This document shows, one piece after another, positions 22,788 through 43,894 of a stretch of 64,000 nucleotides of DNA. The DNA comes from Scyliorhinus canicula. Lineage: Eukaryota. How positions within the stretch are numbered: position 1 is the stretch's first letter; every line of letters begins with the position of its first letter. A program made the translations under genes and the position numbers. The stretch is from positions 270,200 to 334,199 of the forward strand of contig NW_024055843.1 in the NCBI RefSeq assembly GCF_902713615.1. The letters run 5' to 3'. The notes below the pieces were generated by a model that ran no database searches, had not been told where the DNA came from, and saw only the letters and a program-made list of their open reading frames with translations.

Positions 22788-22796
22788 TCACTTAAT
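22788..22796 (-). CDS. IGHM: IgM TM2 exon, coding part (IK-stop)
   Basis: CTTCTTTTACAG acceptor, then ATT AAG TGA; AATAAA at 22390-22385. Confidence 0.75.
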   Translation of the reverse strand: MK

Positions 22797-22935
22797 CTGT
22801 AAAAGAAGATTAAATAACAATGCAGATGTTTGTGATCTAGGGCATTAGTGTTAGATTTTGTAATCAATGAAAACTGCAATGAGTTTTCAAACTGCTGCTG
22901 TCAGTTTTAAGTGTGAGTGGATTGAATCTTCTCAC

Positions 22936-23063
22936 CTTCACCAGAGTGACTGCTGTGCTGTACGACATGCTCAGGAAGAACAGGCTGATGAATGTGGAAG
23001 TGGTTCTCCAGATGTTGCCGTTATCATCCTCATAGTCTTCCGTCCAGGTGTGGTCTGTGTTAT
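22936..23063 (-). CDS. IGHM: IgM TM1 exon (DNTDHTWTEDYEDDNGNIWRTTSTFISLFFLSMSYSTAVTLVK)
   Basis: CTTCGTAG acceptor in phase 1; acidic spacer plus the CART-type motif STFI.LF.LS..YS.AVTLVK; GTGAGA donor. Confidence 0.92.
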
Positions 23064-23199
23064 CTACGAAGATGGAGCCGAGGAAATGTAGTTAAATTGC
23101 GTTTCCTTCCAGGATATCTTGTGTTATTATACATATTATCTTTTATCTTTCTTAAGTGAGTAATATATTCTCGAATTTAATAATCATTGTATATCTTCT

Positions 23200-24360
23200 A
23201 TAAGACCATAAGACATAGGAGCAGAATTAGGCCACTCGTCCCATCGAGTCTGCTCCGCCATTCAATCATGGCCGATATTTTTCGCATCCCCATTCTCCTG
23301 CTTTCTCCCCATGACCCCTGATCCACTAATTGATCAAAAACCTATCTCTCTGTCTTAAAGACACTCAGTGATTTGGCCTCCACAGCCTTCTGCGGCAAAT
23401 AGTTCCACAGATTCACCACCCTCTGCCTGAAGAAATTCCTCCTCATCTCTGTTTTAAAGGATCGTCTCTTTAGTCTGAGAGTGTGTTCTCTGCTTCTAGT
23501 TTTTCTCCAAGTGGAAATATCCTCTCCACGTCCACTCTATCCAGGCCTCGCAATATCCCGTAAGTTTCAATAACATCACCCCTCATCCTTCTAAACTCCG
23601 ACGAGTACAGACCCAGAGTCCTCAACCGTCCCTCATACAAGTTCTTCATTCCAGGGATCATTCTTGTGAGCCTCCTCTGGACCCTTTTCAAGGCCAGCAC
23701 ATCCTTTCTTAGATAGGGTGCCCAAAACTGCTCACAATACTCCAAATGGGATCTGACCAGAGCCTTAAGAAATGAAAATCGCTTATTGTCACAAGTCGGC
23801 TTCAAAATGAAGTTAATGTGAAAAGCCCCTAGTCGCCACATTTCGGCGCCTGTTCGGGGAGGCTGGTACGGGAATATAGCCTCAGAAGTCCACCCGTGGT
23901 TTGTATTCTAGCCCTTCCGACATGAATGCTAACATTGCATTTGCCTTCCTACTGCCGACTGAACCTACACGTTAACCTGAAGAGAATCGTGAACAAGGAG
24001 TCCCAAGTCCCTTTGTGCTTCTGTTTTCTTAAGCATCTTCCCATTTAGAAAATAGTCTATGCCTCAATTTCTGCTTCCAAAGAGCATAATCTCACACTTT
24101 CCCACATTGTATTCCATCTGCCACTTCTTTGCCCACTCCTCGCCTGTCCAAGTCCTTCTGCACCACCCCCCTGCTTCCTCAATGCTATCTGCCCCTCTAC
24201 AGATCTTTGTATCATCTGCAAACTTAGCAACAGTGCCTTCAATTCCTCCTTCCAAATCATTAATGTATATTGTGAAAATGTGTGGTCCAAGCACAGGCCC
24301 CTGAGGCACACCACTAGTCACCGCCTGCCATAATGAAATAGATCCCTTTATCCCCACTCT
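23200..24360 (-). mobile_element. CR1 (HER1-like) 3' fragment with a short SINE inserted at about 23766-23875
   Basis: GVPQGPVLGP...FADD and ALVRSHLEYCEQFWAPYLRKD; tandem TCTTATGG-type tail. Confidence 0.85.
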
Positions 24361-39940: not shown

Positions 39941-42900
39941 GCACTTGTCAAATATCAAGTCAAATTTTCACATTTCTTACAGATGCATATCTTTAAAATA
40001 AATCAATTAAATGTTACTCTCTGAAATACAGGAGAAGAAACCAGAAGATTTACAACCAGTCGGGAAAATTCCTGGTCCCTGCACAGTGACCACGTGGACA
40101 TAAATCGAAAAGACACAAACGGTACAACAATCGAGTTCCCAGCAGATCGGTCTGTTTAATCTGTCAATTTCATTCAAACTGATTCGAACTGATCAATGAT
40201 CAACTTCTGATAACAATAATTCAATAGCTGATTTGAAATGAACTGACATTCATTTCCATACTCTCTCCGACGATTTCTCCCTCTCTGAGTCATGTTACCT
40301 AAAATATAATTTCGCTGACAATGAGCATATTAAATATAACAGATTAATGGCAGTTTCATGTCTGTAACAGAGACTGGTGACAAAGTAAGAATTAAAGAAA
40401 CCAGGAAGTATTCTCATTAAAAAACGATTGACTGTTTTATTTAATTGCTTAATTAAATGTGGGGTTGGCACGGTGGCACAGTGGTTAGCACGGTTGCTTC
40501 ACAGCACCAGGGACCCCGGTTCGATTCCCGGCTTTGGTCACAATCTGTGCAGAGTCTGCACCGTGTCTGCGTGTGTTTGCTCCGGGTGCTCGATTTCCTC
40601 CCACTAGTCCCGAAAGACGTGCTGTTCAGTAATTTGGAAATTCTGAATTCTCCCTCTGAGTACCCGAACAGGCGCCAGAATGTGGCGACTAGGGGCTTTT
40701 CACAGTAACTCGGTTGCTAATGTCAGCCTACTTGTGACAATAATGAAGATTATTAGCATTAAAAAATGTAATCACCAAGATAATCGAACTAAAATACCTG
40801 AGTAAAGAAATTCATTGTTTCCTAAATTCATTTTCGATACAATTTAAAATTCATTAAAAACTTTTATATTGTGCGTGCCGAGTCTACAACTGAATTGTAG
40901 GGGGTCATTTATGTTTAATAAGTCAGTATTAATATTGCATTGCAAGCTATTGTTAATTGTCAATTAGTTGTCTTGTTAGATGACTTGCACTCGATAATAT
41001 AAATAGTAAAAAATAGTTTCTATCATTTAAATTTGTTCCTGCATGAAACATTGTTAAATAATCTGAGTTTTATTAAGTAGTAAGAAATGGTAATCTATAA
41101 ACTTCCCATAACCGGATGGAAACATTCAGACAGTATAATACTTTTATATGAATTTAATCAAATTTTAGTACTTACTTTTTTGCGTTTACTCTAACTGCCC
41201 TTTTTTAACCTACCAAAAATGTTAATTTGCACATTTCTGAAGGCGGTGATAAATCCTGAATTCTATCTATTCTCAGAGTGTAATTCAGGTGATAAATCAA
41301 TGAGTGAAATATAGCAGATGTTTTCAACCTTGCTGACAGTGTTAGAACTGCCCACGCCTGCGCGTGCGTTTGTGTATGTGTTTCTCCACAGGTGTCAGTG
41401 TAGCGGTGGGGGGTGTGGTGGATGGACGAGGGGGTTAGATCATATTATTGTTATAGCTGGACTTCCGAGTTTTGAACCCGTCGTAATTCGATACTACACA
41501 TATAAACATAAATAAAGTCCCTGGCAGTCTGTCATCAATAAAATAGCTGCCTAGATTTAAAAACTCAGAAAATCCCAGTAATTTAGTCCTCAAAGATATT
41601 ACTTAATGGAAGCAGATCCAAATTAATCAGTGTAAACATAGTGAAGACAAATAGTTCAGATCCTTAATCACAACACTAAATTGCAATGAGCAAATGGAGT
41701 AGATTTTTTTGTTCATTTTAACGTTTCAGAAGAAATAAACAAGAGGTTCAGATATAATTTCTTCTTCTATTCTATCATTCGTTTTCCCACAATTCTGTTC
41801 TGTGTGCAGCACAGCTATGGGAGATAGGATGTTATTATTTATTGCAAAGCTAATGTTCGGCTTTTGTAATTAATCTCTTTGAATTTCAAGGTTTTACTTG
41901 TCAATCTCCAGCCTTGTGCAGTTTGAACATTCCTACAATTCAAATAAACCATACGAACATCTCCTTCACTGCCTGAGACCTCGACCTCTCAGAAAACGTT
42001 AGGATTAAATTAATGACAATCGACTCGCTCTCCAACTACAAATGACATTGAAGGAATCATATTGCTGCAGCTGCACAGAGGGAATATAATAACTACACAC
42101 AAATTGCCAAACTGCAATGTTAAAATCCGATTTAAGTAACTGCAAACGTAATCAGGGGTATAAAAACATATATACAATCTCTTGTGTATCTGAACAAAGC
42201 TGTAGATTCAGTATGTTATTATTAAAACAGCTCAGGCAAAATCACAAAATATTTAAAGCCGATAAACGTTTCCGATCATGCTAATGCTGTGCAGAGCACA
42301 GCAGAATTGTGAAAGGCAATTGATGATGGATGATATTTATTATGAAAACATCTATGGTTAATATGGAGTTATATAACCGCGATATAATTGTTTAAATTAT
42401 ATTAATTTTACTTTCCAATATGAAAACGTTTTCATTAAGTAGTTTGAGACTGCAGCAACGAATTGTGTTCTGAATGAAGCCAAACGTTTGATTTTAATCT
42501 GTAATCATCAGTTAAAATAAAAAAGACCGAATATATAGTTAATTAATTTCTTCATCTCCAACACCTGCCCGTTTTCTCCTTAGAGTCGTTTTTCAAACAG
42601 TTTCAAACATGTACATTGTTTGCATTAAACCAGGAAACATCTCAATGTCACCGAGCTTAAAAAATGAAGAAACGCCAAACCGTTTCACAAATATAACTTA
42701 TTTCAAGTCACCGAGACACACAATCTCCTCTCCAGGAAAACACCGAATCTCATCACCAAGGGGCTAAAGCTCGCTGCGTGGAGAAGCAGCTCAGTTCAAA
42801 AAACACTTGCAACAGAATCAAACATAACTTTTCAAGAAAACTTCAATCTCGAACCCACCAACTCAGTCTGTTACCAAATGAATTAATAATTAAACCAAAG

Positions 42901-43348
42901 AGAAATATGAAACAGTATCATCAGTATTGTGAATACGGAGAACACATCAAACTTAGCATATTTTGTTAATATTGGATTCGTTTCCAACACTTGTGCAGGA
43001 GGTGGTAAAACTTGCAGCCTCCAGATGTCACCGAGATTATACATTGCAGAACCGCCAAACTGTTTAACAGACGTTAGGTATTTAAAGTAACCAGACCACA
43101 CAGTATCCTCAGCAAATAAACATCAAATCATAACAACCAGGGGCTGAATCACTCAGCACAACCTTTTGTCAAGAGGCAAAGTAATTATATAACCTTTTAC
43201 ACCAGAATCACATGAAACACTGCAACAAAATCTCAATATTGTATCCACCAAACCCACATTTTAGTGAACAAATGATTTGTTAAAATAGACAAAAATACTA
43301 AACAACGACTGAAATAAAGCAGCCAGTAAATAATTCAATGGTTTTTAC

Positions 43349-43720
43349 CTGCAGTCACCGTCACCATTGTCCCGTGTCCCCAATAGTCCAGACCCCCGGA
43401 GCTTGCACAGTAATAGATGGCGGTGTCTTCGGTCTTCAGACTCGTCATGGTTAAAGAGAAGATGTTGTTTGCAAGGTCTTTGGACGCAGAAAATCGATTC
43501 TGAATCTCTGGGGCACGGTAGCTGATTGAAGAACTTTCGTACCAAATCAGCGAATCCAGCCCCTGTCCGGGAACCTGTCGGATCCAGCTCATCCAGGTAT
43601 CGTCAAGATTGAAGCCGCTGATTTTACAGGTCAGCCTCAGGGAGCCTCCGGGATTTCCCGTCTCTGCCTCTGACTGAGTCAACATAATGTCGTCAATATC
43701 CTCAATATCCGACTGGACAC
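43349..43720 (-). CDS. Germline-joined IgH V(D)J exon, open (372 nt)
   Basis: TTTTACAG acceptor; [54 protein letters not shown]...RFSASKD...[30 protein letters not shown], then GTAAAA donor; no RSS between V and J. Confidence 0.95.
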
Positions 43721-43848
43721 CTGTAAAAATATATCAAAAAGCCCGAGGATTAATGCTGGTGAAATGATTGGTGACTCTGGAACATTCCAGAGAGAGACTA
43801 ACACTGAGACAGTAACAGTGAGAGACTTAAACAATAAAAACTACTCAC

Positions 43849-43894
43849 GGGATAAGAAAGTCAGCAACAAACTGAGAGAAATGGCCCACCTCAT
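43849..43894 (-). CDS. IgH leader exon (MRWAISLSLLLTFLS)
   Basis: 46 nt, phase 1, GTGAGT donor, 128-nt intron; in frame with the VDJ exon. Confidence 0.92.

What the first reader, a model, noticed from the sequence alone, without database searches (positions are those of the whole stretch)
22788..43894. Complete germline-joined IgM heavy-chain gene nested inside a TCR alpha/delta V array
Seen directly: L, fused VDJ, CH1, CH2, CH3, CH4 with secretory tail, TM1 and TM2, all on the minus strand with canonical splice sites, and TCR V-RSS segments on both sides. Established: cartilaginous fishes have germline-joined IgH clusters (e.g. nurse shark IgM1gj), and nurse shark TCR delta uses IgH V segments and has IgH elements within its TCR alpha/delta locus. 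The combination here, a pre-joined RSS-less VDJ with all Cmu exons inside the TCR V array, may be undescribed. Inference: it is an invariant antibody-like receptor under TCR-locus control, or a VDJ cassette that could splice to a downstream TCR delta C, analogous to the germline-joined V of marsupial TCR mu.
Basis: partly seen in the sequence, partly recalled or inferred. Interest (0 to 1): 0.9.

Follow-up and report, generated by a model that had tools for sequence, protein, structure and literature searches.

The report
Germline-joined shark IgM gene, probably broken
This is a real shark antibody (IgM) heavy-chain gene whose V, D and J pieces are already fused in the germline and which sits among T-cell-receptor V genes, but both features are already described in sharks, and this copy carries two frameshifts that probably make it a recent pseudogene.

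Summary
TCR alpha/delta-type V segments with 23-RSS lie on both sides. Two look intact (1.5-4.5 kb) and three are pseudogenes (58.8-64 kb). The window has no N, so all of this is one contig.

The fusion is germline. A DNA run from another individual has a single-copy-depth contig that bridges the J intron, J, the junction and V.

The gene is not "complete" as written. Cmu1 lacks one G in a G-run and Cmu4 has one extra C in a C-run, so the reading frame stops at the end of Cmu1. With X at the two lesions it reads as a flawless 579-aa mu chain. Zero of 23 homopolymer runs in control ORFs are frame-breaking, against 2 of 4 in this gene (p=0.017). I could not check the lesions in reads specific to this locus. 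My odds are about 60% recent pseudogene and about 30% assembly error in a working gene.

No RNA contig was shown to carry this junction. Germline-joined shark Ig clusters are long known, and IgM clusters interleaved with TCR-type V exons were published in 2025. The scan has also noted similar cassettes on other pieces of this genome. I found no support for TCR-locus control or splicing to a TCR C.

The parts
43984..43992 (-). TATA-like box (TATTTAAAT) of the IgM V promoter. The transcription start of the gene family lies near 43962.
   Evidence: Sequence. An RNA contig of run X27 ends at 43962 with a cDNA-adaptor-like loose end. The stretch 43710-44124 is about 50-copy and 99-100% identical among paralogues, so the start site belongs to the family and is not shown for this locus.
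43849..43906 (-). Leader exon. ATG at 43906, second in-frame ATG at 43894, donor gtgagt.
43349..43720 (-). Fused V-D-J exon with no RSS, in frame, ending in the JH motif [11 protein letters not shown] and a gtaaaa donor. It carries an in-frame 18-nt acidic insertion at the mature N-terminus (DIEDIDDI...) and LDSL in place of the usual LEWL (Trp47 to Ser).
   Evidence: (V-set, E=1e-19). The insertion is inferred from paralogue loose ends at 43703. Contigs of samples S1 and S2 cover it without gaps (records 20 and 30).
43391..43405 (-). V-D-J junction: V trimmed by 4 nt, then 9 nt (CTCCGGGGG) of D/N origin, then J trimmed by 4 nt.
   Evidence: Loose ends of unrearranged paralogues give the V end plus heptamer CACAGCG and the J start after heptamer CACTGTG. 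The X4 contig record 28 (43342-43431, depth 12.4) bridges the junction.
35240..43348 (-). J-Cmu1 intron (8.1 kb) with low-complexity CA/TC-rich repeats at about 38.6-40 kb.
34941..35239 (-). Cmu1 exon, frameshifted. The G5 run 35003-35007 is one G short, so the frame ends in TGA at 34944-34946.
   Evidence: All multi-copy paralogue contigs in four DNA runs have one more base here (place 35002). The Mustelus protein P0006 reads SEGECSKIDCEVRH at this point.
34417..34728 (-). Cmu2 exon, intact in its own frame.
   Evidence: (C1-set, E=1e-18)
33488..33796 (-). Cmu3 exon, intact in its own frame.
29036..32086 (+). LINE retrotransposon with an intact 1016-aa endonuclease/reverse-transcriptase ORF, inserted antisense in the 5-kb Cmu3-Cmu4 intron.
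   Evidence: RVT_1 E=2e-29; Exo_endo_phos E=6e-15
28098..28487 (-). Cmu4 exon with secretory tailpiece (...[20 protein letters not shown]). It is frameshifted by one extra C in the C7 run 28382-28388. The internal donor for the membrane form lies after 28160. AATAAA at 28058-28063.
22936..23063 (-). TM1 exon (DNTDHTWTEDYEDDNGNIWRTTSTFISLFFLSMSYSTAVTLVK).
   Evidence: Coordinates were worked out from the ruler; the coordinates for TM1 and TM2 were off and were corrected by hand.
22788..22796 (-). TM2 exon (IK, stop).
3979..4450 (-). Intact-looking TCR alpha/delta-type V: leader 4405-4450, V exon 4018-4323 (…CALRP), 23-RSS 3979-4017 (CACACTG / ACAAAAACT).
   Evidence: The best single-domain solved relatives are TCR alpha chains.
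1528..1872 (-). Second intact-looking TCR alpha/delta-type V: V exon 1566-1872 (…CALRP), RSS 1528-1565 (CACAGAC, 22-nt spacer, ACAAAAACT).
58810..59285 (-). TCR-type V pseudogene with two in-frame stops, one replacing the conserved Trp. Perfect heptamer, 23-RSS.
62047..62393 (+). TCR-type V pseudogene in the opposite orientation: first Cys replaced by Phe and a stop at the WY position. RSS is CACAGTG-23-ACAAAAACA.
63829..64000 (+). Start of a third TCR-type V on the + strand, cut by the window end, with a TAG in the WYRQ motif.

Best explanation
This is one of the many IgM heavy-chain miniclusters of an elasmobranch. Other notes of the scan call the genome a catshark, and the closest named proteins are from Scyliorhinus and Mustelus. 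Its V, D and J segments were fused by RAG-type recombination in the germ line. The fusion left the leader intron, the J splice donor and the 8-kb J-Cmu1 intron in place, and the junction shows trimming plus 9 D/N nucleotides. The cluster lies in the antigen-receptor region where IgH clusters and TCR alpha/delta-type V segments are interleaved. It would work like any germline-joined shark Ig gene: transcription from its own family-typical promoter, splicing of VDJ to Cmu1-4, and a choice between the secretory tail and TM1/TM2, giving one invariant mu chain without any need for RAG. In this assembly two 1-nt homopolymer indels (Cmu1 -1, Cmu4 +1) stop the frame at the end of Cmu1. Most likely it is a recently inactivated pseudogene copy. 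Shown: exon anatomy, germline fusion, the flanking TCR V segments and the two frame breaks in the assembled sequence. Inferred: the RAG origin, and that the lesions are real mutations.
For: Germline status: the window has no N. In DNA run X4, from a different sample, a contig at single-copy depth (12.4, against flanking single-copy contigs at 8-12 and paralogue contigs at 100-800) spans 43342-43431, across the J donor, J, the junction and FR3, with only 2 substitutions. V-body contigs in both samples carry the 18-nt insertion.

RAG-type origin: paralogue loose ends supply the unrearranged V end with its RSS and the J start with its RSS, which shows trimming on both sides. This pattern matches Lee et al. 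2000.

Lesions. Paralogue contigs carry the extra G and Mustelus P0006 supports the longer reading. Control ORFs in the same window (4.6 kb, 23 homopolymer runs of 5 nt or more) have no frame break, against 2 of 4 runs in the Ig coding sequence (Fisher p=0.017). No indel was seen against near-allelic contigs across 43100-44300.

History of constraint: differences from the abundant paralogue contigs are 8 synonymous and 9 non-synonymous in the C exons, so the gene was constrained for most of its history.

Context: PMC12227049 reports TCRalpha/delta-type V exons between IgH clusters. Pseudogene IgM clusters are known in nurse shark.
Against: Both lesions are 1-nt length changes in G/C homopolymers, which is the typical long-read consensus error, and they are the only defects in 579 codons. 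No contig specific to this locus could confirm or deny either run length. The Cmu exons collapse with about 50 paralogues in the Logan contigs, and only the paralogue form was seen at 35002. Another note of the scan (s1-291494) suspects sequencing-error frameshifts in a different Ig gene of this genome. The intron sequence between Cmu2 and Cmu3 matched the two other individuals only at about 95%, which I cannot explain.
Confidence: 0.6

Rival explanations
1. The gene is intact and working, and the two frameshifts are consensus errors of the assembly in a roughly 50-copy exon family. It would encode an invariant, RAG-independent mu chain, probably used early in life like nurse-shark IgM1gj and other germline-joined genes. 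It would have an unusual acidic N-terminal extension and a Ser in place of the VH-VL interface Trp47.
For: With X at the two sites the frame is perfect, with all canonical Cys, the tailpiece and the TM motif. Both lesions are homopolymer length changes. The promoter, leader and leader intron are identical to the expressed family. The VDJ, the 18-nt insertion and the Ser47 are shared by other individuals. Germline-joined genes are expressed mainly in pups, so silence in adult RNA would be expected.
Against: Control ORFs in the window show 0 of 23 homopolymer runs broken, against 2 of 4 here. There are no indels against near-allelic contigs around the VDJ. No RNA contig was shown to carry the junction, and RNA runs hold no more of the VDJ words (0.29 or less) than DNA of other species does.
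Confidence: 0.3
2. The VDJ exon serves the TCR locus. It would be spliced or otherwise joined to a downstream TCR delta (or alpha) constant region, like the pre-joined V of marsupial TCRmu, while the Cmu exons decay.
For: The gene has the same orientation as, and lies upstream of, two intact TCR-type V segments. The lesions hit only Cmu exons and the V exon is intact. Ig V use by TCR delta is known in sharks.
Against: No TCR D, J or C lies in the window. The VDJ has no RSS, so it cannot rearrange to TCR D/J. Splicing would have to skip four good Cmu acceptors, two poly(A) sites and further V genes. Both lesions falling in C exons is expected by length alone (probability about 0.6). No chimeric RNA was seen.
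Confidence: 0.04
3. It is an artefact: either a chimeric contig joining an IgH cluster to a TCR V scaffold, or a somatic VDJ from lymphocyte DNA captured in the assembly.
For: Multi-copy families are prone to misjoins. The Cmu2-Cmu3 intron of the window is matched only at about 95% in two other individuals, while the VDJ region is matched at about 99%.
Against: There are no gaps in 64 kb. The junction is present at single-copy depth in another individual. The same interleaving is published for four species and was noted repeatedly elsewhere in this genome.
Confidence: 0.04

Closest known systems
Germline-joined (VDJ) IgM heavy-chain clusters of cartilaginous fishes (horned shark, skate, nurse shark; reviewed in PMC4279169, origin in PMC2193156)
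   Same: A minicluster with V, D and J fused in germline DNA, the leader intron kept, junctional trimming typical of RAG, its own Cmu1-4, tail and TM exons, and some members that are pseudogenes.
   Different: This copy has an 18-nt acidic insertion at the mature N-terminus and Ser in place of Trp47. It carries two frameshifts in the assembly. Its expression was not shown.
Nurse shark IgM1gj
   Same: A fully germline-joined VDJ on a mu-type chain, giving an invariant binding site.
   Different: IgM1gj lacks Cmu2, whereas this gene has all four Cmu exons. Neonatal expression and a dedicated light chain were not tested here.
Elasmobranch antigen-receptor complex (IgM/IgW/IgNAR clusters linked to TCRalpha/delta; Flajnik et al. 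2025, PMC12227049)
   Same: An IgH minicluster with TCRalpha/delta-type V exons lying between or next to the IgH clusters.
   Different: The text I could read does not mention germline-joined status or this particular gene. Its table S1 was not available.
TAILV / Ig-TCRdelta trans-rearrangement (nurse shark) and the pre-joined V of marsupial TCRmu
   Same: An Ig-type V sequence physically inside or near a TCR locus. TCRmu also has a germline-joined V.
   Different: Those V genes are expressed with TCR constant regions, and TAILV and trans-rearranging VH keep an RSS. Here there is no RSS, the gene has a dedicated Cmu set and no TCR C is in reach.

Membership tests
Shark IgM heavy-chain minicluster | Leader, V(D)J, four C1-set Cmu exons, a mu tailpiece with penultimate Cys and an N-glycosylation site, and TM1/TM2 reached from an internal Cmu4 donor, all within about 20 kb on one strand | tested here: met
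Shark IgM heavy-chain minicluster | Uninterrupted reading frame (functional member) | tested here: not met
   -1 in Cmu1 and +1 in Cmu4 in the assembled sequence. Whether these are real could not be settled.
Germline-joined Ig gene | V, D and J contiguous and in frame with no RSS, leader intron and J donor retained | tested here: met
Germline-joined Ig gene | The same junction present at germline (single-copy) dosage in DNA of independent individuals | tested here: met
   X4 record 28 bridges the junction at depth 12.4. For sample S1 only the V body (record 20) was displayed, so one further individual is firm and the second is partial.
Germline-joined Ig gene | Expression, typically early in ontogeny | tested here: inconclusive
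   No RNA contig with this junction was displayed. RNA run shares were 0.29 or less. No embryo or pup data were examined.
IgM1gj | Absence of the Cmu2 domain | tested here: not met
   Cmu2 exon present at 34417-34728
TCR-associated Ig V (TAILV, trans-rearranging VH, TCRmu-like) | The V is joined or spliced to a TCR constant region | not testable with these tools
   No TCR D/J/C in the window, and no chimeric transcript was seen in the one RNA run laid.
TCR-associated Ig V (TAILV, trans-rearranging VH) | An RSS at the V end that allows rearrangement to TCR D/J | tested here: not met
   The V is fused to D and J and no RSS is left.
IgH/TCRalpha-delta antigen-receptor complex | TCRalpha/delta-type V exons with RSS lying next to IgH clusters on one contig | tested here: met
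   Five such V segments in the window, with no N.

The most novel reading that the evidence does not exclude
The frameshifts are assembly errors, and this is a working invariant IgM heavy chain shared across individuals. Its acidic six-residue N-terminal extension and loss of the VH-VL interface Trp47 would give it an unusual, possibly light-chain-independent or dedicated-partner, innate-like binding site, used early in development from within the IgH/TCR complex.
Probability: 0.2. Interest if true: 0.45.

Novelty: new member of a known kind. Interest (0 to 1): 0.27.

Why it matters
It is a clean, fully resolved example of two known peculiarities of shark immune loci occurring together: germline V(D)J fusion and the interleaving of IgH clusters with TCR V genes. 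It is useful for annotating this genome and for counting functional against dead IgM clusters. If the gene proved intact and expressed, its odd N-terminus and altered VH-VL interface would make it a candidate innate-like antibody worth expressing. As it stands it adds an instance, not a new principle.

Tried and rejected
1. Strict RSS consensus search: no hits. A relaxed scan found the V RSSs.
2. Octamer ATGCAAAT near the V promoter: none within 300 nt.
3. Scan for TCR or Ig J segments (RSS plus FGXG/WGXG plus donor): none.
4. Reads on Cmu1-3: only collapsed multi-copy exon contigs and intron contigs about 95% alike, so the G5 lesion could not be checked at this locus.
5. Exact-product look-ups of the VDJ ORF and of the frameshifted Cmu1 ORF in public assemblies: not on record.
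7. Protein searches gave few candidates. The best V hit was 71% (S. torazame), and the best Cmu1 hit was a shark-like fragment filed under Salmonella, which looks like contamination. The species could not be named from my own results.
8. Table S1 of PMC12227049 is not held, and Criscitiello 2010 is not held.
9. An IgM1gj identity was rejected because Cmu2 is present. A retro-copy origin was rejected because the introns are kept.
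Full report
**What is there**

ORF listing and direct reading show a mu-type heavy-chain gene on the minus strand. I fixed the exon borders from the ruler and a script:
- Leader 43849-43906.
- Fused VDJ exon 43349-43720.
- Cmu1 34941-35239.
- Cmu2 34417-34728.
- Cmu3 33488-33796.
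- Cmu4 plus tailpiece 28098-28487.
- TM1 22936-23063.
- TM2 22788-22796.

All acceptors are ag and all donors are gt. All domain exons are phase 1. Pfam calls the VDJ a V-set domain (E=1e-19) and each C exon a C1-set domain. Cmu2 and the Cmu4 tail find solved mu chains, and the tail aligns to their very end. The internal Cmu4 donor (AGC G|GTAAA, after 28160), the tailpiece with its N-glycosylation site and penultimate Cys, AATAAA at 28058-28063, and the TM1 motif TTSTFI..F.LS..YS..VT are all as expected for IgM. This last judgement rests on established knowledge of mu genes.

**The gene is not complete as written**

The spliced secretory coding sequence is 1740 nt, but it runs into TGA at the end of Cmu1.
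- **Cmu1:** the last 21 codons ([21 protein letters not shown]) are in another frame. The shift lies at the G5 run 35003-35007. All multi-copy paralogue contigs in four DNA runs have one more base there. A Mustelus protein reads SEGECSKIDCEVRH at the same point.
- **Cmu4:** the N-terminal half (…[10 protein letters not shown]) and the C-terminal half (REIFVKWTV…) are in different frames, separated by a C7 run at 28382-28388 where C6 is needed.

With X at the two sites the product is a 579-residue mu chain with no other defect.

**Are the lesions real?**

I could not test them at this locus. Logan contigs of the DNA runs collapse the Cmu exons with roughly 50 paralogues (word depth 100-800 against 5-12 for single-copy sequence). 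Such contigs drop rare branches. The indirect evidence points both ways.
- **For real mutations:** four control ORFs in the same window (LINE ORF2, a GPCR and two TCR V exons; 4.6 kb) contain 23 homopolymer runs of 5 nt or more, and none is frame-breaking. In the Ig coding sequence 2 of 4 such runs are off (Fisher one-sided p=0.017). The 1.2 kb around the VDJ shows no indel against near-allelic contigs from two other samples.
- **For assembly error:** both lesions are the classic long-read error type, and they are the only defects. Another scan note suspects sequencing-error frameshifts in a different Ig gene of this genome (unchecked).
- **My odds:** about 60% real, meaning a recent pseudogene, and about 30% error.

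Differences from the abundant paralogue contigs in the C exons are 8 synonymous and 9 non-synonymous. That is roughly a third of the neutral expectation, so any inactivation is recent.

**The fusion is germline**

The window has no N. DNA runs from two other samples of the same organism hold 0.5-0.6 of the words of the VDJ stretch.
- In run X4 a contig at single-copy depth (12.4) spans 43342-43431 with two substitutions. That covers the J intron, J, the junction and FR3.
- One substitution turns the window's WGHG into the canonical WGQG.
- V-body contigs in both samples (records 20, 29 and 30) match at about 99% without gaps.
- Contigs from unrearranged paralogues break away exactly at the junction. 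They supply the germline V end (TGTGCAAGAGAC followed by heptamer CACAGCG) and the germline J start (heptamer CACTGTG followed by ACTATCTGGACTAC).

The fused gene therefore lost 4 nt from V and 4 nt from J, and it has 9 nt (CTCCGGGGG) between them. This is the signature ascribed to RAG activity in germ cells (PMC2193156). The retained leader intron and J-C intron exclude a retro-copy.

**Peculiarities of the V domain**

- Compared with paralogues (…VQSDIVLTQPEAE) the gene has an in-frame 18-nt insertion, giving [19 protein letters not shown]. Paralogue loose ends at 43703 define it, and it is present in the other individuals' contigs.
- The near-invariant LEWL is LDSL. The closest database V, from S. 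torazame at 71% identity, has LECL at the same place.
- These changes fit either relaxed constraint or an altered VH-VL interface. I could not tell which.

**Expression**

- The region 43710-44124 (promoter, leader, leader intron) is multi-copy and 99-100% identical among paralogues, and also in a related organism.
- RNA contigs match the 5'UTR and leader exactly. One ends at 43962 in a cDNA-adaptor-like sequence, about 25 nt downstream of TATTTAAAT. This marks the start site of the family, not of this locus.
- No displayed RNA contig carries this V body or junction exactly. RNA contigs that match J diverge into other CDR3 sequences.
- RNA runs hold no more of the VDJ words (0.29 or less) than DNA of other species does.
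- Only one RNA run was laid, and no embryo or pup material was examined. Germline-joined genes are reported to be expressed mainly early in life.

**Surroundings**

- *Downstream, same strand:* two intact-looking TCR alpha/delta-type V genes (…CALRP) with a 22-nt and a 23-nt spacer RSS, at 1528-1872 and 3979-4450. Their best solved relatives are TCR alpha chains.
- *Upstream:* three TCR-type V pseudogenes. One is on the minus strand (58810-59285, two stops). Two are on the plus strand (62047-62393, and 63829 to the window end). Each has a stop at or beside the conserved Trp (WY/WYRQ) position.
- There is no J-like element and no further C-like exon in the window.

**Comparison with what is known**

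Germline-joined VDJ, VD-J and VJ clusters are a textbook feature of cartilaginous fishes, and so are pseudogene clusters (PMC4279169, PMC2435157, PMC2193156).

The scan itself has noted other IgM and IgW cassettes among TCR V arrays on other pieces of this genome, including other germline-joined VDJ exons (unchecked AI notes).

The gene is not IgM1gj, because Cmu2 is present. It does not meet the defining features of TAILV, of trans-rearranging VH or of the TCRmu V: it has no RSS, it has its own Cmu exons, and no TCR C is in reach.

**Verdict**

This is an ordinary kind of locus and a new member of it, probably a recently dead copy. The TCR-control and TCR-splicing ideas are unsupported.

**Unexplained**

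The Cmu2-Cmu3 and Cmu1-Cmu2 intron sequences of the window are matched only at about 95-96% in the two other individuals, while the VDJ region is matched at about 99%. Possible reasons are haplotype diversity, copy-number variation among clusters, or a local mis-join. Long reads would tell which.

Noticed in passing
window 17898-18806 (+): Intronless 302-aa rhodopsin-family GPCR ORF (Pfam 7tm_1, E=1e-17) between the IgM gene and the TCR V genes. It has no solved relative at E<1e-6.
   Followed up: partly
window 29036-32086 (+): LINE with an intact 1016-aa endonuclease/reverse-transcriptase ORF, antisense inside the Cmu3-Cmu4 intron. It is probably a young, possibly still active element.
   Followed up: partly
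window 12935-13008 (+): A tRNA-Glu(TTC) gene or a tRNA-derived repeat (Rfam 47 bits, also found by ARAGORN).
   Followed up: no
window 33924-34191 and 34549-34954: Single-copy-depth DNA contigs from two other individuals match the window's Cmu introns only at 95-96%, while the VDJ region is matched at about 99%. No exact intron contig was displayed. Unexplained.
   Followed up: partly
window 43374 and 43383: Other individuals' contigs read the canonical WGQG (CAA) and TAC where the window has WGHG (CAC) and TAT. This is an allelic or very close paralogue difference in J.
   Followed up: partly
P0021: A 132-aa protein filed as Salmonella enterica 'hypothetical protein' is 73% identical to this shark Cmu1 exon. 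It looks like vertebrate contamination in a bacterial assembly.
   Followed up: no
P0002, P0006, P0009: Genome-derived gene models from whale shark, Mustelus asterias and S. torazame contain V-CDR3-J (and, for the last two, Cmu1) in one frame. This suggests germline-joined VDJ genes in those genomes too.
   Followed up: partly
window 4677-5750 and 38630-39960: Long CA/TC-rich low-complexity tracts that produce spurious Cys/His/Thr-rich ORFs on both strands.
   Followed up: no
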